64,000 bases of DNA. Source: Dicyema japonicum (Eukaryota > Animalia > Dicyemida). Positions 24,661 to 56,820 of this stretch are shown here, piece by piece; the stretch's first letter is position 1, and the number at the start of each line of letters is the position of its first letter. The DNA lies in assembly GCA_011109175.1 (NCBI GenBank), contig RDEW01000059.1, positions 62,001 through 126,000 on the forward strand, given 5' to 3'. The notes under the pieces are model-generated. The model did not search any database. It was not told where the DNA came from and was given only the letters and a program-made list of their open reading frames with translations. The position numbers and the translations under genes were made by a program.

Positions 24661-25239
24661 ATGCCAGAACCAGGTATTATTCGTTTAATAATTCTAGTTG
24701 CTAAGAATCACAAGTCGTTCAATCTAAAATCCCGTATTATAAAGAAATTGCTGAGTAAAATGACAAATCGGTTGACTCTACAATACTTGGATACCCAAGT
24801 GTTTGACTTGTTCACTTCCCTCTCAGATCTCATTTCCGCGTATTTAGAAAGTCCCGTATTGGGGGAGAAAATTACAATCAATTTTATCAGAGTTATGTTG
24901 AAGCTAAATTACTTCACCAGTCAAGACACGATAACGAGTGTCGACCAGGACGACATGGAAATAATGGAAGCATGTATTCAATCCCTGATATCAATATCTG
25001 TCACCTCCTTGGAAGAGAGGAGACCCAATCCTGAAATACCTCATCATATGGCCACTGTATACGACTCTCTAAGTCGGATAGTTTGCAGACATTTGAGTTC
25101 CAAAAGTATTGAAATAGTCCTACGATTCTACAATATTGTCTCTAATAATCACTTTATTGAGTCATGCTATGATGAGTCAAGGTTACTACACAAATTTACT
25201 TTATTTATTGATTCTCTTACGGATGTCATTATTCTATGA
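24661..25239 (+). CDS. Uncharacterised helical protein, first exon (192 aa open frame; probably continues after a 23-nt intron)
   Basis: ATG-initiated 192-codon ORF after an AT-rich promoter-like gap; possible intron GTCATTATTCTATGAAATAATAG contains the apparent stop. No family recognised. Confidence 0.55.
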   Translation: MPEPGIIRLIILVAKNHKSFNLKSRIIKKLLSKMTNRLTLQYLDTQVFDLFTSLSDLISAYLESPVLGEKITINFIRVMLKLNYFTSQDTITSVDQDDMEIMEACIQSLISISVTSLEERRPNPEIPHHMATVYDSLSRIVCRHLSSKSIEIVLRFYNIVSNNHFIESCYDESRLLHKFTLFIDSLTDVIIL

Positions 25240-29976: not shown

Positions 29977-32900
29977 TTAACAAATCCATTTTCTGCAGTT
30001 TGTAGTATTGCACATGCAAGGAATTAAATTGAGAACATCATTAAACATGTAATCATATGTAATCTAACATTACTACAACTCGTACCTCATCCCCACTATT
30101 AATTCTCTGTTTTGAAACAATCAATATCTTTGGGGATCCTTCAAACGTGATGATATCTGTAGCACAGTTCGGAGAACACGAATGATTAGCGTATCTAGCC
30201 AGTCCCCCACAACAGGAAGCGTCAATAACAAAGTCATCATTTATTCTAAACATATAAACTCCTCTATTCTGACAAATATATATTACTAATACATTCCCCT
30301 CATATATTTCCTCTCTCCTGTTTGCCACTTCATTTCTGATAATCTCCCCAATGTACTCTACAATCACTGTCCCTTTCTCAATATCCCGAGTAGCAAACAG
30401 TCCCAGTCCTTGTATGGAAGATCTCCCAAGTCGAATTTTGTCGTTTCTCCTTTCAACCAGCATTCGTCTGTACTGTGAGTGTTTTGATTGAGTTTTTCTC
30501 CCAGGACTCTTATCCTTTATCCCTGTTATTCCTCCACTTTTTGGTTGTTTCTTTGATCTAAGGGTCATTCACCAATCAACCTCCTCAAAACGTACATATC
30601 AACTCCTTCCGTTCTGGCACAACCACTAGAATTGTACAATAGTGGGACTAAGGACACGTGATTCTTTCCATGACGAAACTTATACTTTGATAAGCTAGTG
30701 ACACCAGGGAACTAACGTAAAGGACAACAACAACCGACTCAATGACCACCCTCACATTCTGATTGGTCAGTCCAAACACACTCTCCAAACACGGAAGAAA
30801 GTAATCATTGGCTGGGTCGTATAGTGGTGGAGGGTAATTACTATAAATAGCATTTTGAAGAGATTTTATATCATCATCCTCAAAATGGACGACGTTTAGT
30901 GGGTCAGTCAGGTCTTCCACAGTAAAGAAGGGTCTCTCGTTCACTTCTGTTATAGAGAATCTAAGTTTCGATCTCTTCCCTTTATCCCAGGGACAAATAC
31001 AAAATCTGATCGCCTCATATCCACTCTATTATCTCAAAAGACAATAATACAGGGTATATGAAATCCGTGGTGTTGAATCTCCCACTAAAGATTTGTTGAG
31101 GCAACAATTCCCCAAAGCTGGCAATAACGAGGGAACCAATCCTCATAATAAAGTTATGATTTTTGTTTAGAATACTAAAATTATTATAGCTTTACCTAAT
31201 ATGAGCAGTCATATCATAATTATCGTAATTGGGGACATAGACCTGTCTAATCACTGATATATCATCCATGGGTGTCTCCAAACTCTCCAAAGAGTGTTGA
31301 GAACAGTAGAAGGACTGTTATAAGCACAATTACACCTTTGAGGGACAAAACACACAGTTGCACACTTTGGCACACTCAACGTGGTATGCATTTGAACAAC
31401 GACAGTAAAAACATATCAGTGAGGCACCACGACGACCACACGTGCTACAAATCTGTCGACTGGCCTTCTTTAGGGCCTCTGTCACGTTGATTAGCGCCCC
31501 ACATGTTGTCTCATAGACCATATTCGACCACAGAGCACAGTTTATGTGAACCCACTCGTTCAATCCATAATAGAGAAGTCTACCTCCTCCATTCGACTCT
31601 AAATCACCAGTTTGTCCACAAAATAGACACGTACGTGTATCAATGAATTCATCCGATTTGATAACATGTCCATAATTAATGTTGAGCTCACTCTGGGAAT
31701 AACCACCAATCAAACAGCAATTTTATCAATCTTGGGTTTATAAATAGGGGTGGCAGAATATCGTTTCCATTGGATATCATTTCCCCTGTTCAATATCTTC
31801 CCCCATATATAGAAGTATCCTATTTGTTAGTGGAGGAATTACAAATTGTTTCCTCTTAGCCTTCTGTCCCTTCCCAATAACATCAGAAGGACACGAATGA
31901 TCAAACTCGAACAAATCCTCAAAATTAACAGTCATCTAGCATAAGCCAATTAATACATTATTAGACCTCTGCAGTCTCGCAAAACACTGCAATGAACAAA
32001 AGTTAATGTACTCCTCAAAAAGTCCCTTCAGTTATATAGTAATAGTACAAATTCGTCACAATGGGTAAACCAGGTTGGGGTACACCGAAGTGAGAAGGAA
32101 GACAGTATATTTCTGCAATATGCACAGACCAAACAACTATTCTTTACAATATTAGACAAAAGAATTATATCTTCATATTCTACAATAAATAGTAACCACC
32201 TACCTGGTCTGCTTTTTAGTTTAGAAATAGTCTCTGGATTTGGATTCCTCTGTGTGTAAATGGATGTTGGGGCGTCAATGTTAAGAAAGGTGGCAAATTG
32301 TCTGACAAGATTTGAAATATCCACATTCCCTACATTGGGATCCATAACCATAGTTATCCTCACCTTGCAATATCAAAATCACCAACCTGTCCTTCCTCAG
32401 GTTCCATCCATCTCTCAAACGATCCCTCTTTATCACTCTCAAAGTAATTTAGTACAATCTACCAAAATACTGACATTTCGTCTGCCACGTCTCCTTGGAG
32501 TAGAACTGACTTGCTGATTCCCGACCTCATAATGTTCTTCATCTCTATCGGATGCCTCCACATAAACTTCCCTACTTCGACTACCATAAACAATAATCAA
32601 ACCTGACACTCCTAATGAATGGTGGAGAAGGAATTCTCAGTGGAAATAAATCCCGTCTAGTAGGATTTTCTAAATTAGAGATAATTTATACTCTGCTGCT
32701 GATCATATACATGTTTGATTAAATTCTCATAATAATCCCTATCACCGTCCACAAACACCTCATCCCCGATGTCCCCCATTACACAAGTAAAAATTTTATC
32801 AGGCTTCGAAAAAGGAAACGACGACCTGAGTACTGGCTGCTTTAATTTTGGTTCAAATGGCTTAGGCTACATTTTTTATTAATTTAAACATTGTTATCCA

Positions 32901-38270: not shown

Positions 38271-39581
38271 TATTCTAAAATTGTCTTTAATATTTTACAC
38301 CATTTTTAATGTATGCTGCCGATATTTTTTAACGAAATAAATATATTTTATTTTGTAACGAATAATTTTTTAACGAATAAATGGCAACCTCTCCAACAGA
38401 TTCCATATATAGCTCATTATCTTCGGCACTAAGGCAGTTTCCTTTCTAAGATCGCAAGTCATTGATATCAAAATTCAGTAATGACCATCAGGAAACCGAA
38501 TGGCTGTTCCAAAAGAATTCTCTAGCAGTTGTCAGGGGAAACAACCATTCCATCCTATCAGCCAGATGATTTTATTGTCATGTTACGTAATAATTTTTTT
38601 GATCTCTTGATCAGGAGTTCCCAACCTTTTTAGTACTCGCATTCCTAAATCTTTCTTCATAAACTCTCGCACCCCAAGAACATTTTTAATTTATATAATT
38701 ATTATTTGTCACCGTCCGTTGGAGGAATGTCTAGCTTACTTCCAAAAAATAATTACAAAAAATAAATAAGGGAAATTCATTAGAATTGTTATTAAAAACT
38801 AAAAAATATTATATTAAAAAAAATTAATCACACAGATAAATCATTCTTGTGGGTTAACATAAACTGACAACACAAGAACTTAACGAAATTAAGAGATCTC
38901 AGTCGCAAGATGTATTGCCGAGCAATATACAAAGAATGAAAATCAGATTTTTAGCAAAAATTTTAACATTTGAGGATTAAATTTGTTATTTAACCTCAGA
39001 TTATGTAAAACTCCGCTTTTTTACAATTCAAGAGAGAACTGAAAACGATAATGATCGAGGTAGTTTTTTCCATGTTAGTATTATGAACATCAATTGATCC
39101 ATTTCGGACGCGATCGACTATACAGCCCCCCGCCGTAGTGTGACTTCTTATCGACGATTGGGTTTATGCTTTAAGTAAATTTTGGATAGGATTCGTTCTA
39201 TATTTTTAATAAGAGTCAGTATCAAACACTCCGCGGACAAAGTCCGCGTAAAAGAAGTGTTGCCATCTTAAAGCCTAAATTTGGGTTTGTTCTATAAGCA
39301 ATGAGCAACGATTTATAAACAAAAGAGTTAAGGAGTTTTCTGGAGGGTATTACATCTGAGACCTACCATAAAGCTTGGACTCCACATCTGGACCCTTCCT
39401 CCTTTTTTTATTAATTTTTTTGCAGGACGTTTCTCCCAGCTTTATATACGTGTCCTGGATCTTTGATCACCTCCTGAAACCATTGATCCGATTCACTACA
39501 ATCTTGCTGATCAGTTCTAAGAGCTTGTTTTTGTCCTCGCTTATACAGTCTTTCAGTTTCTTGTTTAAGAGGAGCTTAATT

Positions 39582-41516
39582 TGTCACATGGCGGCGCGTA
39601 ACGCATGGGCAGCCTGTTACATTTTTTCGACCTTGAAAAGGTCTTTTGATTATCCGACATTATTATTATTAATGTCGGATCACTGGGTCAAAAGAAAGAA
39701 ATAAAAGTTCTCATCTAACTAAGTGATCCCAGACCGACAAAGATGAGGATGAGTCCCTCATCGGATTATCCGACATTTAATTTTATATATCCGATTTATA
39801 TCGTGATTTAATCCTGTTAAATTAGTTTTTTATTTATAAATGTTATGATTATAAAGATTTTATTTTTTATAGCGGTAAACCTAGATTTCTAGCGTGATTT
39901 ATAGCATGGAAGATTATTTTGTTGCAATGGCTTCTTACAAGGGTTTTGTGAAAGATTGCGTTGAATATCAAACTTTAAAAGATGCTTTGCATGATAAATT
40001 TCCCGAAAACTTCCGAGGCACCGAAAATATAGGCTTGTAAAGAAGATAGAGAATTTTTCTATTATCAATGACAGGCATTGTAAATTTTCAATAATTTTAG
40101 ACTGTATCTTAAATCAACTGATCCCAAGTTAGTCATATCCCTGGATAATGAAACCGAAATGGAGCATGTTGCGAAATCGTTGCACGAGTTTTCACACGGA
40201 GGAGTCAATAAAATTGAGTATGAATGTCGACAAAGATACTTCACTGTAAAGAATGAGATTATCAGAAAAGTCATTCGAAATTGTGAAGTCTGCAAATTTT
40301 CGCGTCCTTTAAAAGTTCGTGATTTTTTATAATTGTAGATTGGAGATATAAATCACCATGTGTTTGCTTCTTCTCCAAATGAACGTTTTCAGATAGATCT
40401 AATAGACCTGAAAAAATTTTCAACATTAAATGAAAATTTCAAATGGATTTTAACGGTCATTGACATATATCGTAGGTGGTTTTTTTTTAATTTATAGATT
40501 CGCTTTTGTACGACCACTCTATAATAAGTCTGGTAAAGAAGTATGTGAAAACTTAAGATCTTTGTTCCGCCTGAATGGGCCATGTAAATTTCTTCAGTCG
40601 GACAATGGTTCTGAATTTAAAAATCAAGAAATAACAAAACTTTGCGAAGATTTTAACATTAAGCAAATTCACGGAAGGCCTAACAATCCACGAGCACAAG
40701 GAATTGTCGAAAGATTTAATCAGACGATCACGAGGAAGTTGTCAAAAATGCTGGATAACAGTGAAAAAAAGTGGCTTGATAAATTAGAAAGTGCTGTCTA
40801 CAGTTACAACATATCGGTCCATTCATTTTCTAACGAAAGTCCTTTCGAAAGATATCGAGGAATTAAGGGAATAAATTCAATAATTAATGGTTATACTTAT
40901 ATCATTATGACTTAGATAATTTAAGTGATGAGTGTGCGATTCCAGAACAAATTGACGATTTGGTTAATTGTTCGACTCCAGAATCTATTGAAAAATCACG
41001 TAGTTTGATTTAAAAAATTTATATCTAGATAACTCCCAGTCAGATAATTTGCGTCCGAATGCGAAGAGATTCAACTTCGAAATTAAATCGATTGAAGAAA
41101 ATTCAAATTATTACAAAGCTATGAACAGGAAAATGAATGTTCATAATAGTAAATATACTTTTAACATGGGAGATAAAGTATGAATCAAAAACATTAATAA
41201 ATAGGTTCGGGCTAAAAAGGACTTTGGAACAAATCCCTCATTGCGACTGGATAAGTTTGAGTCTCAGTATTATCCAGTTGCAGAAATAATTAATATTTTA
41301 TCGAATAATCGCGTGGAGGTAGTTTTAAATAGTTTAATTTGATAGATAAAAAATTCGAAAGGAGAAATATCGACTGTATTAATGAGTAGACTAAAAAAAG
41401 TTACTTAAATTTAATTTTTTGTGGTTAATAAATCATTTATAAAATTAATTGAAGTTAATCTTGGTTCAAGGTTAATGTAACAGGCTGCCCATAGGTAACG
41501 CTTGGCCCATGTGACA
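39582..41516 (+). mobile_element. Ginger-like DNA transposon, 1935 bp
   Basis: 40/41-nt TIRs starting TGTCACATGG (34/41 identical), TGT...ACA ends, perfect TSD TAATT (39577-39581, 41517-41521), internal retroviral-type integrase gene. Confidence 0.88.
39906..41408 (+). CDS. DD35E integrase/transposase (HHCC + rve core + C-terminal GPY/F-like domain), ~440 aa, 8 exons, one 1-nt lesion near 40005
   Basis: Introns 40075-40100, 40315-40338, 40476-40497, 40890-40915, 41000-41028, 41178-41204, 41319-41345. HEFSH...CEVC; QIDLID; SDNG-35 aa-E (VERFN); FNMGDKVRAKK. Spliced length 1322 = 441 codons minus 1 nt. Confidence 0.88.
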
Positions 41517-42039
41517 TAATTGCAGCTCTGTTAGTCTTCTCTAGGAGGTTAGGATCTTCTCCCTCTTTGTAGAGAAGAACCACCCCTCGCACCCATAAAG
41601 TAGGCTAGGAAGAATAACTCTCTTTAAGATGAACAGGTAGGTGTCGCTGCTAACTTATAACTTCTGTGTACATATGAGCGACTGAAAGGCTCTTTTTCTC
41701 TTCTCATTTATGTCGTCCATGTAATCTCATGCGTGTCCATAGTCGACCCCAGGTAGCGCAGACTGAGTGTATTCTTGTTTCAGGTGCTCTTTCACATTGC
41801 TTACTAGGAGTGCGCAAGATTTTTCAGCAGAAAGCTTTAGCCCTATCAAGTTGTTAAAAACTTATTTGTCGAGTAGCTACACTTTCACTCTATCACAGTT
41901 AAATTTAATTTATTACAAATTTAAAAGAATTTATTTGTTTGTAATAATTGTTTGGCAAACCATATAAAACAATAGATATACTAATCGATAGCGATATGCA
42001 CACTATGTTGGTTATGGTTGTGAAATTAAATTAAAATTT

Positions 42040-42290
42040 TTCCAAAGACCAAGGGTAACCAAACTAACTAACTCCTCGATCCTGACTCGTTCCAGCATTC
42101 CAGAACTTTTCACCAGGTAACGACTTTGTCCCCGGGGAAGAATTGTTGGATACTCTTGATGCCGGCCAGGCATTGGGCGCCTCCTCAATAAGTTGGGTCC
42201 AGTGACGCCATCGGAAGGAAGGAAAATACAACTACGTATCACCACATGGCGCCACGCGACAATTCGCAATATTGTGATCCGTAAATTGTA
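42040..42290 (-). mobile_element. LINE family A 3' end
   Basis: Carries the terminal motif GGATCGAGGAGTTAGTTAGTTTGGTTACCCTTGGTC plus AT tail. Confidence 0.6.
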
Positions 42291-49437: not shown

Positions 49438-50547
49438 TTACCCTTTCTCATTCTCCAAACGGTAAAAGTAATCAAAATTGGAGACAATGATAGGAACAGA
49501 AATAGAAAGTGTTATAATTCCACAAATGGCACAAAATGAACAGACAATTTTACCAATTATACTGGTGGGATAAATATCTCCATACCCCACTGTTGTTAGA
49601 GTTTGGACAGCCAACCAAAGTGTTCCAGGGATACTCTGAAATCGAGAGTCAGGAACATTCATTTCAGCAAGATACAACAAACTCGAAAAAATGAAGGAAA
49701 GAATGGTCAAAAAGAAGATCAACATTAATAATTCTTGGTATGACGCCCTCAGAGTTCTACCGAGAATCTTTAGATCCCTAGAATGCCTCGACAGCTTTAA
49801 AATTCTGAAGACCTTGACTAGTCTCAAAATACTAATACTCTCAATACTGTTCGGCCCCCATGATTTTGAATATCTAATTGCGAGAATTACAAAATATGGA
49901 TAAATTGACAAAAAGTCGATGATGTTTAAGCCATTTTTGACAAATTTGAGTTTATTTGGACATAAAATAAGTCGAAATACAAGCTCAAACGAAAACCAGG
50001 CCACACAGCCGGATTCGATGTAAAAAATCATAAGGGAATGTCTGAACTCAGAAATAGTCTCCATACAGAATGTAGCAATCGAAAGTAAAATAACTGAGCA
50101 TGAAAATAAAACAGAAATTTTGGCATAAAACGAGCTTTCCGGGAATTCACAAAGCAACCACAGTTTCTTTAAAACTAGATTTTTTGGCAATTCTGCTTCA
50201 ATGTCTGATTCCGTTGTGTATTCGGACGCCAATTCTGATATAATGAAAGGATCGAGACGAAAAAATGAGACCTCTTCAATGAAGACATCGATGTGAATTT
50301 CTACGGGTTTCATAAGGTGTCCACCACTCTGGTAATACTGCAAAATTGACTCAAAACATGTTCTACTTCTATCAAAGAAATACTCATTTAGATCCCTGTT
50401 ATAAAATTTGTTAATTTTGTCAGGATCCCCCAGAAGAGTGTTTGGGAATTTATTCAATGTGGCATAAAATGTTTCAAATTTCAGTCCACTGACATTGATG
50501 AGTATTTTACTCATATTTGGTGGACTTATAACCAATGGATTGGCCAT
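49438..50547 (-). CDS. Shaker (Kv1)-family voltage-gated K+ channel subunit, intronless, 369 aa
   Basis: T1 domain (INVSGLKFET, EYFFDRSR, ILQYYQSGG), S1-S6, S4 LRLVKVFRILKLSRH, filter TTVGYGD, S6 SISVPIIVSNF. Confidence 0.95.
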   Translation of the reverse strand: MANPLVISPPNMSKILINVSGLKFETFYATLNKFPNTLLGDPDKINKFYNRDLNEYFFDRSRTCFESILQYYQSGGHLMKPVEIHIDVFIEEVSFFRLDPFIISELASEYTTESDIEAELPKNLVLKKLWLLCEFPESSFYAKISVLFSCSVILLSIATFCMETISEFRHSLMIFYIESGCVAWFSFELVFRLILCPNKLKFVKNGLNIIDFLSIYPYFVILAIRYSKSWGPNSIESISILRLVKVFRILKLSRHSRDLKILGRTLRASYQELLMLIFFLTILSFIFSSLLYLAEMNVPDSRFQSIPGTLWLAVQTLTTVGYGDIYPTSIIGKIVCSFCAICGIITLSISVPIIVSNFDYFYRLENEKG

Positions 50548-52321: not shown

Positions 52322-55284
52322 ATGACGGACTTCTCAAATCTATCATTTGTTATTGACTCAGCTGGTCTCATAAACTTGAATGTACTTGACGATGTCGTCT
52401 GGTCAATGTACCACGAGAATGGAGAGAAGCAGATGCAAGCAGTGAAAATCCTCGAACTCATACGAACCCACCCAGAGGCTTGGAGGAACGCAGATACAAT
52501 TTTGAAGAGTCAATACAACGAGACCAAATACTTTGGTCTACAGCTGCTGGAGATTGTCATCAAGAGAAGTGGAGAACCCTCAGTGAACAGGAACGGATTG
52601 GACTTAAGGAATTTGTTATGAGAATTTGTGGATTGCAAGGAGTCGACAAGGTGGCCTTGCAAATGTTGAAGCGAGACTGGTCCATGATCAAGCAACTCGT
52701 TAATATGAGTCTACAAGACGAAGTGGTGTGCATAAACTGCATGAAGATCCTATCTCAACTAACTCCTGATGTCGTAAACTCTCAAAGAGGGGCTCCTCTC
52801 CTTGATTTGTGTCGATTCATATTGGAGAACGCAAAGTCGTCTACTCTACTTCTCAGTACACTCAACACACTAAAAAAACTCCTCTCATTCCTCGACCCCC
52901 CTATTGGACTGTTACATGGCATTGCTGAATGTGCCTCTACTCACCAATTGAGGAACTCTGTACTGGGGTGCCTGGCTGAGGGTTTATCCCACGTGCCTGA
53001 CTTCAGTGGGATATTCCCAATAGCCAGTAGAATACTAAAGTCTCTACAAGTTGATTTATCTCTGAGCAGTGAGTATCTTCAAAGTGTCATCCTTTCATAA
53101 CATCGTTTCTGACTACCTACTATGGAAATTTGAGGAATGCTGCTCCAGATTTGATTCAGATTGGGGTAGAGAAGTTACTTCAGATTTCAATGACGACAGA
53201 TAAGAGTCTGTTTGTGCAAATTGTGGAGTTTTGGCGGCAATATGTTTCCTTGTTATACTCGAATCCGAGTGATGTTAGACAAGAAGTACTTCACGAACTG
53301 AGATGTATGATGATATCTCGGATGGCAAAACCAGAGGAAGTCATTGTTGTGCAGTTAGAAGATGGGAGTGTCGTAAGGGAGACTATGAAGGACACTGAGG
53401 AGGCTAATTTGTACAAAATAATGAGAGAAGTGCTGATTTACCTCGCGCATTTGGACACAACGGATACACTGGCTATAATGGTGGAGAGACTGGAGTCTAT
53501 GGTTGACACTAATACTACATGTTGGGCCATTGGATCTATTAGTGGAGCTCTGATTGAGGAGGACGAGAACAAATTTATAGTAATTGTCATAAGGAATCTT
53601 CTTTCAATGTGTGAGAAGGCTCACTCAAAGGATGAGAAGGCGGCTGTGGCTGCCAATATTATGTATGTAGTGGCACAATATCAACGATTCCTTAGAAACC
53701 ACGTTAAATTTTTAAAGACTGTTGTATACAAACTGTTTGAGTTTATGCATGGTTGTGAGTTGTATTATTGTAGAGTTACACGATGGTGTCCAGGATATGG
53801 CTTGTGAGACCTTCTATAAGCTGGTGCAGAGATGTCGATCAAAGTTTTTGGAGCCTTTAATGTCTACCACGTGTTGTTTGGCTATTGAAATTATATCCAA
53901 TCTGGAGGTAATAGTATCTGATTTGTCCCTTCAACAGGTATTAATTCTATATAGTGTAGTTACTATGTGTTTATGAAGCATTGGCCTCTGCTGTAAAGGC
54001 ACATGATGGGGGACTCAATTTTATTGACACTTTGATGCAGCTCCCTAACCTTGAGTGGAATCATGTAAAAAACGATTACTCTAACCCACATCAGGTAATC
54101 AAAATTATAAGAATAAACACGTGTGTGTGCAAACAGGCTGGGAATATGTACAAGAGACAGGTTATGAATCGGTAAATTATGGTAGATGGACTTGATATTC
54201 GATGATCTGGTTGAAATATACAAGTTTCTCAGCACAACAGAGGACAGACTGGCTTATACTATCAGAACAGATATATTAAAACTGATATCTACCTATCTTG
54301 ACTCATGTGAAAGTCAAGGAGATGTAATAAATATTGTAATCTCTAGATGAGTGTTGGAGTAATCACGAATATTATTGGACTAGTACTCCCCATCATTGAC
54401 CCCCCAATGGTAATTTTGATGACTTCGTTTGTAAGCCATTTAAAGGTAGAGAATGTAGTTACACCAGGAATCTGCTAAGCCTTACATTTATGACATATTT
54501 GGACTGGTCTTTACTTCCACATTGAAGTTGATAAGTCAGGACTATGTGAATATGCCTGAGTTGAGGGTGGAGATGGTCAACTTCCTCAATTGTTGTCTGC
54601 GGGAATTGTCTGTCTGGAGTTGTCGAGTTTAATGATAATAATCTGGGAATGATAATTCAGACTATTTTGTGGTTCACTCAACATCCAATGCAGCAAGTGG
54701 CAATTACTGGACTGGACTGTCTTAGATTGTTGTTTGGGGGAAAATTTCGTATGATTAACCCTCCAAAGTTTGTTGAGTTTTTGAGAACTTACTTTATGTC
54801 GACAATCGACCATATTATTAAGCTGATTGTTGAACCAATACATACTTCTGGAGGAGTCAAACCATATGCTTTGCTGTTGGCCGATATGATGACAGTTATT
54901 GAGGAATTGAAGGACAGAATCAATCCCACGTGCGAAAATGTACCATACGTCTACATTACTCTTACGGAAATTCTCGAAAAGAGACACCCTAATTCAGCTT
55001 TGTAGTTTTGTGTGTCATTTGTAGAATCAAAGTTTTTGTTGAAGGGTTGTTCAGTTTTGATAGAGACGCTAAGAAGCTGAAAAAACACCTTAAGGACTTT
55101 ATTGTGCAGATTAGAGTTGTGCTGTTTGTTATTGTAGGATGAAGTGGGAGATGACACTATTGACTTGTATTCGGAAGAGAAGGCTGAGGAGATGAGTAAG
55201 GCACGACAGGAAAAGACATTAGCTAATTCTAAGGTTCCTGGTCTGCTTGATAATGATGACACCTTCGATAACACTTTGTGGTGA
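52322..55284 (+). CDS. XPO1: Exportin-1 (CRM1), shortened and divergent
   Basis: TKYFGLQLLE; MISRMAKPEEVIVV; LYKIMREVLIYLAHLD; CWAIGSISGA; NLLSMCE...NIMYVVAQYQRFL; KLFEFMHE(22-nt intron 53752-53773)LHDGVQDMAC; KKHLKDFIVQIR(22-nt intron 55116-55137)...VPGLL; ends TGA 55284. Confidence 0.95.
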
Positions 55285-55589
55285 TTATTTTTCTTTTTCA
55301 ATCAATTTAATAATTATTTCAAAATTATTTGTTTTTTAGATAATATTGATAACCTTTTCCGTTAAAAATAAATATTACCATTGTAATTTAGAAAATCACT
55401 TACTCGTGTACATTGTTAGTTGACCACTGATTTTACTTAGTATAACGGGTCTTATAATTTTCGCATGATCTTAGTTCAATTTCTTTTCAAACATCATTCT
55501 AAGAGAATGCTTGATGCCTTTTTCTTAGTCTTCTTAATAGGTCAGAAAATTCGTTCTTTCTTCGTGGCTTTTCATTATGACTTTTGAGG

Positions 55590-56180
55590 CGTCTGGATTC
55601 CCGTCACCTCTGGAACCAGTGGGCTTGGATTGTGGATTTTTCCTTTTCGCGATCCGATTCTGGTTAGCAGCTCAATGACCTGATTCATGTGCTTACTGAC
55701 ATTTCACGAGACTGGTTCAAAAATGAACTGTCCACAAAGAAATTCGTATTTCTGCATCTCTAGGGTTTCTGCCTTCTCCGAATTAGAGCCTGGGTTACTC
55801 GCTGTCATAACAAGGTTGGAGGGAGAGAGGCTATCCAGGCAAGGTATCTACCGCTTTCATGGGAAGAGAGTCTTTGGTTGACTGGGCGAGTCCGAGTGGC
55901 TACAATTGGACAGGAAATCTGGCCGCTTCTAGTTCCCAAGCAATAACTCCGATGATTGAGATGTGTCTTGGACTCCTTCCAGCACTCCTCTGACAGAAAA
56001 GAGAGTGAAAACCTTTCGCGTCGACCATTTCAACGATCTACAGTTATGGACTGTTTTATCTATAGTCTTTGAGCATATAAATTTATCCCAGTCTCGTTGT
56101 TTATTAGGGTTCTTTGACAATTTCGTACTTAGACGCGTCCAAACTTCCCGACCCGTGGGTACATGTCACGGTTAAGCGTC
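55590..56180 (-). mobile_element. CRE-like retrotransposon 3' fragment (RLE domain)
   Basis: Reverse-complement homologue of 23670-24240 (TLFP*KR, SLSPSNL, KYEFLCGQFIFEPVS, RGKIH). Confidence 0.8.
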
Positions 56181-56820
56181 TGATCCATTAATGTAGCGTA
56201 GAATTTGATGCATTGACCAAAGACAGGAAAGCCAGAAAGCGAGTAGTAAGTGTATTCCATTCTTCTATAGCGAAGCGGTAATTTACATTGGATCCATCCA
56301 GTTTTATCAAATAAAATATTAAGCTTTTTTAATCAAAAACAATATAACATAGTAATAAGTTAAATAGAACCGGGTCGAGAACTGATTCGTGATGAACTCT
56401 ATTTGTACGTTAGTGAGTTGGCAAGATCCAACTGATAGGATGGAAGAGAAATGAACAAAATATAGAGTAGGTATTAACCTCCTTGAATTTTTCAGATCTC
56501 GTCAGACGGGAGAGAATGTGAAGCCCTTTAACTATGACTATTCCTCCACAGGACGCCCTCAGGAATAGGATTTCAATCTACTCTAGGATATAAATCACGT
56601 CTCCCCAAATCATTTCCGGAAAACGAGAATAATTCTAAAAATATACACAACTGACTGTTAACAAATGCGATCCGAAGATTTGAATTAAACGAGTTTCTCG
56701 GTCGTCCTCCACCGGACATCTATATCAGTGAATCTTCTTTTCATCGTGTGATATTCGGGAAACCTGGAACGCCCCCGCTGCGGTTACCAACGCCTACCTG
56801 TACAAGACCGGGTTAAATTT

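What the first reader, a model, noticed from the sequence alone, without database searches (positions are those of the whole stretch)
39582..41516. Ginger-like DNA transposon whose integrase gene carries seven host-style micro-introns
Seen: 40/41-nt TIRs (TGTCACATGG...), TGT...ACA ends, perfect TAATT TSD, and an HHCC + DD35E + C-terminal integrase gene. Seven introns of 26, 24, 22, 26, 29, 27 and 27 nt each restore the frame, giving ~440 aa with a single 1-nt lesion. The ORF track shows only a 151-aa piece. Known: Ginger transposons use Gypsy-like integrases, have TGT termini and 4-5-bp TSDs, and some contain introns. Inference: a 1.9-kb element with about 16 introns per 1000 codons, all near the host's minimal size, means either long co-evolution with the host's shrinking spliceosome or intron gain inside a mobile element. 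It could be a vehicle for, or a record of, micro-intron evolution, and may be an undescribed family.
Basis: partly seen in the sequence, partly recalled or inferred. Interest (0 to 1): 0.85.

Follow-up and report, generated by a model that had tools for sequence, protein, structure and literature searches.

The report
Ginger2-type transposon with seven micro-introns
A 1.9-kb jumping gene in the tiny-intron parasite Dicyema japonicum has an integrase gene split by seven 22-29-base introns, while its closest relatives elsewhere have none, so it records introns arising in a mobile element, though no RNA data could be reached to prove splicing.

Summary
Window 39582-41516 is one copy, broken by a 1-nt deletion, of a multi-copy cut-and-paste DNA transposon of Dicyema japonicum. 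It has TGT..ACA ends, about 43-nt TIRs (37/43 matching, not 40/41) and a 5-bp TSD. Nine paralogous empty sites prove the TAATT duplication. Twenty-three of 25 copies carry their own TSD, consensus TAWTA.

Removing seven GT..AG segments of 26, 24, 22, 26, 29, 27 and 27 nt gives a 440-aa H2C2 + DD35E + C-terminal-domain integrase. It aligns end to end with intronless homologues.

By termini, TSD, target, domains and tree it is a Ginger2/Tdd-type element, not a Ginger1, GingerRoot or LTR element. Its nearest relatives are compact intronless elements of microsporidia. The Dictyocoela muelleri element also has TGTC ends and a TATTA TSD.

A sister lineage in the same genome shares intron 6 exactly and intron 1 approximately. 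It lacks introns 2, 3 and 7 and has two introns of its own, so intron positions turned over inside this transposon clade. Gain in the dicyemid lineage is the likelier reading.

Splicing is untested because no RNA runs were reachable. First-stage readers of this scan noted similar elements on other pieces of this genome.

The parts
39306..39576 (.). Left part of a roughly 610-bp host repeat into which the element inserted
   Evidence: At least 40 genomic copies at 87-93% identity. Paralogues run uninterrupted across the insertion point.
39577..39581 (.). Target-site duplication TAATT, left copy
   Evidence: Nine paralogous repeat copies carry a single TAATT at this site.
39582..39623 (+). Left terminal inverted repeat, TGTCACATGG... 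(42 nt here; one G lost compared with the other copies)
39650..39777 (+). 5' subterminal non-coding region with three copies of TTATCCGACATT (39650, 39671 inverted, 39766); two of them form a 14-nt palindrome
   Evidence: Their function is inferred: a possible transposase-binding or promoter element.
39906..40074 (+). Exon 1 (starts at ATG), broken in this copy by a 1-nt deletion between 40009 and 40010
40075..40100 (+). Intron 1, 26 nt, phase 2; donor is GC in this copy, GT in 11 of 12 other copies
40101..40314 (+). Exon 2, H2C2 zinc-binding domain
   Evidence: Pfam Integrase_H2C2, 3.8e-7
40315..40338 (+). Intron 2, 24 nt, phase 0
40339..40475 (+). Exon 3, start of the catalytic core, with the first D (D148)
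40476..40497 (+). Intron 3, 22 nt here (20-24 nt in other copies), phase 2
40498..40889 (+). Exon 4, the rest of the rve core, with D209 and E245
   Evidence: Pfam rve, 4e-9
40890..40915 (+). Intron 4, 26 nt, phase 1, at the start of the variable linker
40916..40999 (+). Exon 5, variable linker
41000..41028 (+). Intron 5, 29 nt, phase 1, in the variable linker
41029..41177 (+). Exon 6, linker and start of the conserved C-terminal domain
41178..41204 (+). Intron 6, 27 nt, phase 0; same position and phase in sister lineages L063 and L064
41205..41318 (+). Exon 7, C-terminal domain
   Evidence: The family profile aligns to Ty3 integrase through its C-terminal domain.
41319..41345 (+). Intron 7, 27 nt, phase 0
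41346..41408 (+). Exon 8, ending in the TAA stop codon
41474..41516 (-). Right terminal inverted repeat, ...CCATGTGACA
41517..41521 (.). Target-site duplication TAATT, right copy
41522..42130 (.). Right part of the interrupted host repeat
   Evidence: The right-hand limit is approximate.

Best explanation
The feature is one copy of a young, multi-copy, autonomous-type Ginger2/Tdd-class cut-and-paste DNA transposon of the dicyemid Dicyema japonicum.

**Mechanism (inferred from the family)**
- A 440-aa integrase-like transposase has an H2C2 zinc domain, a DD35E RNase-H-fold core and a C-terminal domain homologous to that of Ty3/retroviral integrases.
- It binds the roughly 43-nt TIRs and cleaves at the TGT..ACA ends.
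- It joins them to target DNA with a 5-bp stagger, preferably at TAWTA. Repair then gives the 5-bp duplication.

**Gene structure**
- The gene is interrupted by seven spliceosomal introns of 22-29 nt. This matches the host's own intron size class and its own intron density.
- The host spliceosome must remove them before the transposase can be made.

**State of this copy**
- It is dead or crippled by a 1-nt deletion in exon 1 and a GT>GC change at the intron-1 donor.
- It sits inside another repeat.

**History (inferred)**
- The lineage is nested among intronless elements of microsporidia and unidentified organisms.
- Its introns were therefore most likely gained after it settled in the dicyemid lineage.
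- Intron 6, and probably intron 1, arose before two Dicyema sublineages split. Introns 2, 3 and 7 arose later in the window's sublineage (intron 5, in the variable linker, could not be compared reliably), and two others arose in the sister sublineage.

**Shown versus inferred**
- Shown: element structure, mobility, copy number, domain content, gene model by homology, differing intron positions.
- Inferred: actual splicing, the catalytic mechanism, and the direction (gain versus loss).
For: **Host**
- The assembly has 67,542,437 bp in 377 pieces. This matches the D. japonicum assembly: 67.5 Mb, 377 scaffolds, GC 36.7% (PMC6736024).

**Mobility**
- About 45 or more copies and fragments at 93-100% identity to the window copy.
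- 23 of 25 copies with both ends have a perfect 5-bp TSD that differs between loci. The consensus is TAWTA.
- Nine paralogous empty sites carry a single TAATT.
- An internally deleted derivative (226 bp lost, same breakpoints) is present in 7 copies.
- Pairwise divergence of full-length copies is 0.4-4.1%, median 1.9%. One of 13 has an open spliced frame.

**Protein**
- Pfam H2C2 + rve; HHCC and D-60-D-35-E.
- The family profile hits PFV integrase (1e-26), and Ty3 integrase over positions 32-429.
- Foldseek matches the PFV intasome at 1e-19.

**Introns**
- GT..AG ends in nearly all copies.
- Junctions 1, 2, 3, 6 and 7 fall in conserved blocks of 11 intronless homologues without a gap.

**Class**
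- TGTNR ends, TIRs, a 5-bp TSD as in TDD-4/5, an AT-rich target, H2C2 + DDE, and no YPYY or GPY/F. These fit the Ginger2/Tdd definition (PMC2836005; PMC10045372).
- Trees put it with KRBA2/SCAND3-like proteins, apart from Gypsy and Copia pol. Those proteins derive from Ginger2 according to the abstract of PMC3575427.
- The D. muelleri relative is a 1796-bp TIR element with TGTC..GACA ends and a TATTA TSD.

**Intron history**
- The Dicyema clade has support 98/94. It is sister to Dictyocoela inside a 100/99 clade.
- L063/L064 share I6 exactly and I1 within 4 nt. The two I1 sequences share a 10-mer (264 of 20,000 shuffles reach it).
- L063/L064 lack I2, I3 and I7 and have introns at about residues 154 and 284.
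- Another Dicyema family (L049) is intronless across residues 5-303 and at the I6 and I7 positions.
Against: - No RNA evidence. No RNA run was listed, and the four runs laid behave as DNA libraries with no intron-sized joints among those shown.
- No Dicyema protein or transcript is in the protein collections.
- Copies show no codon-position or synonymous excess, so selection on the spliced frame is not visible within the family.
- No Ginger2 reference sequences (TDD-4, Ginger2-1_NV and so on) were available. Membership rests on defining features and on KRBA2/SCAND3-like proxies.
- The sister-lineage gene structures come from two single, decayed copies. One junction (C) does not restore the frame exactly.
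- The AU test does not reject the window family grouping with Dictyocoela (p = 0.12).
- The databases hold only uninterrupted ORFs, so intron-bearing relatives in other animals would be invisible. This biases towards 'gain'.
- In CACTA transposases intron loss, not gain, prevails (PMC4158355).
Confidence: 0.8

Rival explanations
1. The element and its introns are the same, but the introns are ancestral. The common ancestor of the Dicyema and microsporidian elements was already intron-rich. The intronless relatives arose by reverse-transcriptase-mediated intron loss, for example as a condition for working in intron-poor microsporidia. The two Dicyema sublineages differ by differential loss.
For: - Intron loss through cDNA is the prevailing mode in CACTA transposases (PMC4158355).
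- The protein databases list only uninterrupted ORFs, so intron-bearing relatives would be missed.
- Many short hits of 114-280 aa could be exons.
- The AU test leaves the topology inside the 6-row clade open.
Against: - The Dicyema clade is nested within more than 20 intronless lineages when rooted on KRBA2-like proteins. Many independent complete losses would be needed.
- The closest outgroup contig, P0007, is intronless at I1-I3.
- Another Dicyema family of the same group is intronless at I1-I3, I6 and I7.
- The ancestor would need nine or more introns in 440 codons.
Confidence: 0.22
2. The seven interruptions are not introns but decay: random small insertions in a dead integrase pseudogene family.
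For: - No RNA evidence of splicing.
- Copies evolve neutrally.
- 12 of 13 full-length copies are broken.
Against: - All seven are shared by all copies. They are GT..AG-bounded, 22-29 nt long, and each restores the frame.
- Five sit gap-free in conserved blocks of homologues.
- One copy has an open 440-codon spliced frame.
- The family and a deletion derivative amplified recently, which needs a working transposase.
Confidence: 0.03
3. It is the integrase part of an LTR retrotransposon, or a domesticated host integrase gene such as GIN or KRBA2, rather than a DNA transposon.
For: - The integrase is homologous to Gypsy/Ty3 and retroviral integrases.
- Source annotators call the microsporidian homologues 'Gag-Pol polyprotein'.
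Against: - The unit is 1.9 kb, bounded by TIRs, not LTRs. It has no RT, RNase H or gag.
- There are dozens of copies with their own TSDs, and empty sites exist.
- The tree separates it from pol integrases.
Confidence: 0.02

Closest known systems
Ginger2/Tdd DNA transposons (TDD-4, TDD-5 of Dictyostelium; Ginger2-1_NV and others; Bao, Kapitonov & Jurka 2010, PMC2836005)
   Same: - TGTNR termini and TIRs within the 45-297-nt range.
- A 5-bp TSD as in TDD-4/5.
- An AT-rich, palindrome-like target.
- A single transposase with H2C2 + DDE, and no YPYY or GPY/F.
- No protease domain.
- It groups with KRBA2/SCAND3-like, Ginger2-derived proteins.
   Different: - At 1.9 kb it is shorter than any listed Ginger2 (2.75-6.7 kb).
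- Metazoan Ginger2 were reported with 4-bp TSDs and an RTATAY target. Here the TSD is 5 bp at TAWTA.
- It has seven micro-introns.
- A conserved C-terminal domain aligns to the Ty3 integrase C-terminal domain.
- Its nearest relatives are microsporidian.
Compact integrase elements of microsporidia (Dictyocoela muelleri/roeselum, Nosema granulosis, Pseudoloma neurophilia), annotated 'Gag-Pol polyprotein' or 'transposable element'
   Same: - 57-59% identity in the catalytic core, and the protein aligns over its full length.
- Same size: the D. muelleri element is 1796 bp.
- TGTC..GACA ends and a 5-bp TATTA TSD.
   Different: - The microsporidian genes are uninterrupted ORFs.
- The D. muelleri TIRs are about 203 nt, against 43 nt here.
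Ginger1 DNA transposons and the GIN1/GIN2 genes derived from them
   Same: - Integrase-type transposase, TGT ends, TIRs.
- Some Ginger1 genes have 1-4 GT-AG introns.
   Different: Ginger1 has 4-bp CCGG/CCGT TSDs, YPYY and GPY/F motifs, and a C-terminal OTU or Ulp1 protease. None of these is present here.
GingerRoot/IS3EU, IS481EU, Polinton/Maverick
   Same: DDE transposase related to integrases.
   Different: - These lack the HHCC motif (PMC10045372).
- GingerRoot has 6-bp TSDs and TA..TA ends.
- IS481EU has 4-, 15- or 25-bp TSDs.
- Polintons have 6-bp TSDs and a DNA polymerase.
Exon/intron evolution in CACTA transposases (Buchmann et al. 2014, PMC4158355)
   Same: Intron number and position vary among related transposase lineages within hosts.
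   Different: - CACTA has 1-6 exons with ordinary plant introns, and loss dominates.
- Here there are eight exons in 1.3 kb, with introns at the host's minimal size, and gain is the likelier direction.

Membership tests
Ginger2/Tdd | Cut-and-paste structure: TIRs, no LTRs, no RT/RNase H | tested here: met
   - TIRs match at 37/43.
- Only H2C2 + rve are found.
Ginger2/Tdd | Termini 5'-TGTNR ... YNACA-3' | tested here: met
   TGTCA...TGACA in all 13 full-length copies.
Ginger2/Tdd | TSD of 4 or 5 bp (5 bp in TDD-4/5) | tested here: met
   - A perfect 5-bp TSD in 23 of 25 copies.
- Paralogous empty sites with a single TAATT.
Ginger2/Tdd | AT-rich target preference (RTATAY in Nematostella Ginger2) | tested here: met
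   - Consensus TAWTA; TATTA/TAATA in 13 of 23.
- It is similar in kind to RTATAY but not identical.
Ginger2/Tdd | Transposase with an H2C2 zinc finger and a DDE core; lacks YPYY and GPY/F | tested here: met
   - HHCC and D148/D209/E245 are present. No YPYY or GP[YF] string.
- A conserved C-terminal domain is nevertheless present.
Ginger2/Tdd | Groups with reference Ginger2/Tdd transposases in an integrase tree | tested here: inconclusive
   - No Repbase or TDD-4 sequences were available.
- By proxy, it lies in a 99-supported clade with KRBA2/SCAND3-like proteins, apart from Gypsy and Copia pol.
Ginger1 | 4-bp CCGG/CCGT TSD; YPYY and GPY/F motifs; C-terminal OTU or Ulp1 protease | tested here: not met
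   - The TSD is 5 bp and AT-rich.
- The motifs are absent.
- There is no protease domain, and the protein ends at 440 aa.
GingerRoot/IS3EU | 6-bp TSD, TA..TA termini, no HHCC | tested here: not met
   Definitions come from PMC6839031 and PMC10045372.
Gypsy-type LTR retrotransposon | Integrase fused or adjacent to RT/RNase H, flanked by LTRs | tested here: not met
   - No RT or RNase H in the element.
- Inverted, not direct, terminal repeats.
- It is separated from the pol integrases P0004 and P0019.
U2-type spliceosomal introns of the host | GT..AG (rarely GC..AG) boundaries; length in the host's 20-30-nt class | tested here: met
   - Boundaries and lengths for 13 copies.
- Host values come from PMC6736024 and PMC13644364.
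U2-type spliceosomal introns of the host | Removal restores a frame that aligns in order, without gaps, with intronless homologues | tested here: met
   junctions 1, 2, 3, 6 and 7 lie in conserved blocks. Junctions 4 and 5 lie in the variable linker.
U2-type spliceosomal introns of the host | Spliced transcripts exist | not testable with these tools
   - No RNA run was listed.
- The laid runs are DNA-like contigs.
- No Dicyema proteins are in the collections.

The most novel reading that the evidence does not exclude
An integrase-type DNA transposon entered the dicyemid lineage as an intronless gene, possibly by horizontal transfer. All of its named close relatives are intronless elements of microsporidia, which are also parasites. 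It then acquired at least nine micro-introns at lineage-specific positions, until its gene reached the intron density of an average host gene. If so, in a genome whose splice signals have shrunk to 'GTa...AG' within about 25 nt, short insertions are easily turned into introns. Transposon families would then give a datable, replicated natural experiment on how introns are born.
Probability: 0.45. Interest if true: 0.8.

Novelty: new variant of a known kind. Interest (0 to 1): 0.66.

Why it matters
**Intron origins**
- How new spliceosomal introns arise is a long-standing open question, and clear recent gains are rare in animals.
- Here related transposon lineages in one genome differ in intron positions. 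Their outgroups are intronless, and each lineage has many datable copies.
- Gains or losses can therefore be ordered on a tree and tested with RNA.
- The case also shows that a selfish element depends fully on the unusual splicing machinery of a host whose introns are among the shortest known in animals.

**Transposon biology**
- The work defines a compact Ginger2/Tdd subgroup (about 1.8-1.9 kb, 5-bp TAWTA duplication) shared by a dicyemid and microsporidia. This hints at horizontal transfer among parasites.

**Annotation**
- These elements escape ORF-based annotation. The longest plain ORF is 151 aa, although the genome is 49% repeats.

Tried and rejected
- **RNA evidence.** The look-up of sequencing runs listed four runs of one sample, none on record as RNA.
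  - Laid on the element, they cover TIRs and flanks evenly and carry Nextera mate-pair adaptor ends.
  - The joints shown are internal deletions only, none intron-sized.
  - So they are DNA, and splicing was not tested.
- **Transcript-derived proteins.** An exhaustive exon-4 search found nothing above 59% identity. A word-index search found only a Dictyocoela fragment. Dicyema is not in the protein collections.
- **Selection among copies.** Variants are spread evenly over codon positions. Synonymous fractions are 20-28%, against 20% expected. This is uninformative, as expected for copies that decay neutrally.
- **More copies of the sister lineage.** L064 proved to be a single copy, with other hits at only 66-75% identity. 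I did not try to get round this.
- **TIRs of L049, L048, L063 and L064.** None of 20 nt or more was found. Whether these decayed loci are TIR elements is open.
- **Host micro-intron in the window's CRM1 gene.** I looked for a worked example but did not resolve it. Host intron statistics are taken from the literature instead.
- **Readings rejected.**
  - A ciliate host with a reassigned code: no in-frame TAA or TAG occurs in the exons, and the assembly statistics match Dicyema.
  - An intronless 64-nt or 38-nt alternative for the first junction: ruled out by the other copies.
  - Ginger1, GingerRoot, Polinton, an LTR element and a domesticated gene: see the membership tests.
Full report
**Host.** The window is part of an assembly of 67,542,437 bp in 377 pieces. 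This matches the published Dicyema japonicum assembly: 67.5 Mb, 377 scaffolds, GC 36.7%, 49% repeats, 6.2 introns per gene, mean CDS 1155 bp, mean intron 38 bp (PMC6736024). A 2026 survey finds D. japonicum and myxobolid myxozoans to be the only animals with introns mostly under 30 bp. Their splice signals are reduced to 'GTa' and 'AG' (PMC13644364). The exons use the standard genetic code, with no in-frame TAA or TAG.

**The observation.**
- The element runs from 39582 (TGTCACATGG...) to 41516 (...CCATGTGACA) and is flanked by TAATT on both sides.
- The TIRs are about 43 nt long with six mismatches: 37/43 in the other copies. This copy has lost one G in the left arm.
  - I1 40075-40100 (26 nt)
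  - I2 40315-40338 (24 nt)
  - I3 40476-40497 (22 nt)
  - I4 40890-40915 (26 nt)
  - I5 41000-41028 (29 nt)
  - I6 41178-41204 (27 nt)
  - I7 41319-41345 (27 nt)
- The product is 440 aa. It carries H85-x3-H89-x28-C118-x2-C121 and D148, D209, E245, giving the DD35E spacing.
- Pfam finds Integrase_H2C2 in exon 2. It finds rve split between exons 3 and 4 at the place where intron 3 lies.
- The 1-nt lesion is real. All 12 other full-length copies have one more base (T in 11, C in one) between 40009 and 40010.
- This copy also has GC instead of GT at the intron-1 donor.

**It is a mobile element.**
- The genome holds about 45 or more copies and fragments at 93-100% identity to the window copy.
- Thirteen full-length copies each lie at a different locus with their own 5-bp duplication.
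- Over 25 copies with both ends, 23 have a perfect 5-bp TSD: TATTA/TAATA in 13, AAATA/TATTT in 4, TAATT in 2. The consensus is TAWTA.
- The window copy sits inside a roughly 610-bp host repeat that has at least 40 copies. Nine paralogues run straight across the insertion point with a single TAATT. This is direct proof of insertion with duplication.
- A derivative lacking element positions 723-948 occurs in seven copies with identical breakpoints. It must have been moved after the deletion, presumably in trans.
- Full-length copies differ by 0.4-4.1%, median 1.9%. One of 13 keeps an uninterrupted 440-codon spliced frame. I do not name it.

**Are the seven segments introns?**
- No RNA could be reached, so splicing rests on sequence evidence.
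- The boundaries are GT..AG in nearly all copies. A GC donor at intron 3 marks one subgroup of four copies.
- Lengths lie in the host's own class.
- The spliced protein aligns end to end with 11 uninterrupted homologues.
- Junctions 1, 2, 3, 6 and 7 fall inside conserved blocks without a gap. Examples are FSIINDR|LYLKS, PLK|IGD, DIYR|RFAF, GDK|VRAKKDFG and NNRVE|IKNSKG.
- Junctions 4 and 5 lie in the variable linker. Removing them is still needed to reach the conserved C-terminal domain in frame.
- So the segments are insertions relative to the homologues, not intronised coding sequence.
- Seven introns in 1323 bp equals the host average of 6.2 per 1155 bp, about 16 per 1000 codons.

**What kind of element is it?**
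- An exhaustive search with exon 4 found 17,546 relatives.
  - The best are 400-470-aa stand-alone proteins with the core at residues about 170-300, the same layout as here.
  - Pol polyproteins score far lower, at 27-34% identity.
- The named close relatives are all microsporidian: Dictyocoela roeselum and D. muelleri, Nosema granulosis, Pseudoloma neurophilia.
- More distant named hits are 'KRBA2-like' and 'SCAND3-like' proteins. These are reported to derive from Ginger2 (PMC3575427 abstract).
- All carry only H2C2 + rve. The long hits are Gypsy or Copia pol.
- In trees, the stand-alone integrases form a clade (support 99 and 91 in the two runs) apart from Gypsy and Copia pol.
- The family profile matches PFV integrase (1e-26). 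It matches Ty3 integrase over nearly its whole length, including the C-terminal domain. An AlphaFold model of the closest homologue hits PFV intasome chains at 1e-19.
- The features match the published definition of Ginger2/Tdd (PMC2836005; PMC10045372):
  - TGTNR ends and TIRs;
  - a 4-5-bp TSD, 5 bp in TDD-4/5;
  - an AT-rich target;
  - HHCC + DDE;
  - no YPYY or GPY/F.
- Other families fail.
  - Ginger1 has a CCGG TSD, OTU or Ulp1, and YPYY and GPY/F.
  - GingerRoot has a 6-bp TSD, TA ends and no HHCC.
  - Polinton and LTR elements also fail.
- Direct placement against Repbase references could not be done.
- The D. muelleri homologue is itself a 1796-bp element (L043:2793-4588). It has roughly 203-nt TIRs, TGTC..GACA ends, a TATTA duplication and an uninterrupted 450-aa ORF. 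This defines a compact subgroup shared by microsporidia and Dicyema.

**Intron history.** After first-stage notes of this scan pointed to other intron-bearing Ginger-like elements in the genome, I searched the genome with a KRBA2-like protein. That search found at least five integrase lineages.
- Two decayed loci, L064 and L063, form the sister lineage of the window family. They share about 50-56% amino-acid identity with it. The joint clade has support 98/94, is sister to Dictyocoela at 91/83, and all lie in a 100/99 clade with the intronless contig P0007.
- Their gene structure differs from the window family.
  - An intron sits at exactly the I6 position and phase, in both loci.
  - In L064, an intron lies 4 nt from I1. 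It shares the 10-mer TTTTCAATAA with I1; 264 of 20,000 shuffles reach this.
  - There is no intron at I2, I3 or I7.
  - Both loci have an intron at about residue 154, and L064 has one at about residue 284. The window family lacks both.
- A further Dicyema family (L049/L048) is uninterrupted over residues 5-303 and at the I6 and I7 positions.
- The intron-bearing clade is nested among intronless lineages, so gain in the dicyemid lineage is the simplest reading. Under it, I6 and probably I1 arose before the split, and the rest after.
- Several caveats apply.
  - The databases list only uninterrupted ORFs, so intron-bearing relatives elsewhere would be invisible.
  - The sister structures rest on single decayed copies.
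  - The AU test leaves the inner topology open (p = 0.12).
  - In CACTA transposases, loss through cDNA prevails (PMC4158355).
- I put gain at roughly 0.65-0.7.

**Verdict.**
The element is a Ginger2/Tdd-type family with a distinctive gene architecture.
- It is a new variant of a known kind.
- Its value is as a tractable record of micro-intron turnover.
- The decisive missing piece is RNA evidence.
The broken frame was read with X at the break.

Noticed in passing
window 39306-39576 and 41522-42130: The element is nested in a roughly 610-bp interspersed repeat that has at least 40 copies at 87-93% identity. The class of that repeat was not determined.
   Followed up: partly
window 39650-39777: There are three copies of the 12-mer TTATCCGACATT (one inverted, forming a 14-nt palindrome at 39652-39680). 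They lie only in the 5' subterminal non-coding region. They could be transposase-binding or promoter elements.
   Followed up: partly
G000 C35:575507-577248, C312:66737-68438, C312:748807-750516, C179:11623-13331, C68:1143039-1144747, C356:35430-37162, C356:486428-488129: Seven copies share one 226-bp internal deletion (element positions 723-948, which is window 40304-40529). It removes the end of exon 2, intron 2, exon 3, intron 3 and the start of exon 4. This is a non-autonomous derivative that amplified. A second subgroup lacks about 100 bp of the 5' non-coding part (element 81-182).
   Followed up: partly
L064 (G000 C43:31752-35156) and L063 (G000 C37:31542-35024): This is the sister lineage of the window family, with about 50-56% amino-acid identity and a different intron set. 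It shares I6, has an intron near I1, has its own introns at about residues 154 and 284, and has none at I2, I3 or I7. Both loci are decayed single copies.
   Followed up: yes
L049, L048, L053, L057, L058; L046, L047, L050; L055, L056, L059, L065: At least three further integrase lineages of the same stand-alone type occur in this genome. Their catalytic region is read in one frame. L049 is open over 328 aa and has candidate introns only in the linker. No TIRs were found in the two loci scanned (L049, L048).
   Followed up: partly
L043:2793-4588 (Dictyocoela muelleri SDVU01000034.1): This is a complete 1796-bp microsporidian relative with roughly 203-nt TIRs, TGTC..GACA ends, a TATTA TSD and an intronless 450-aa ORF. 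The source annotates it as 'Gag-Pol polyprotein', which is probably a misnomer.
   Followed up: yes
L013 (G000 C223:1777278-1782278), intron 7: One copy carries a 55-nt insertion ending in an A-run inside intron 7, making it 82 nt. It also has a 35-nt insertion near the 3' end that is shared with L008.
   Followed up: no
L010-L013, intron 3: Four older copies have GC instead of GT at the intron-3 donor. This is a subfamily marker, and GC-AG introns may be tolerated.
   Followed up: no
window 24661-25236 (+), 30056-30568 (-), 49441-50547 (-), 52390-56300 (+): Host genes lie near the element: a TNFAIP8-like protein, a SET-domain protein, a Kv-type potassium channel (BTB_2 + Ion_trans) and CRM1/exportin-1. 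The last is split into many short exons.
   Followed up: partly
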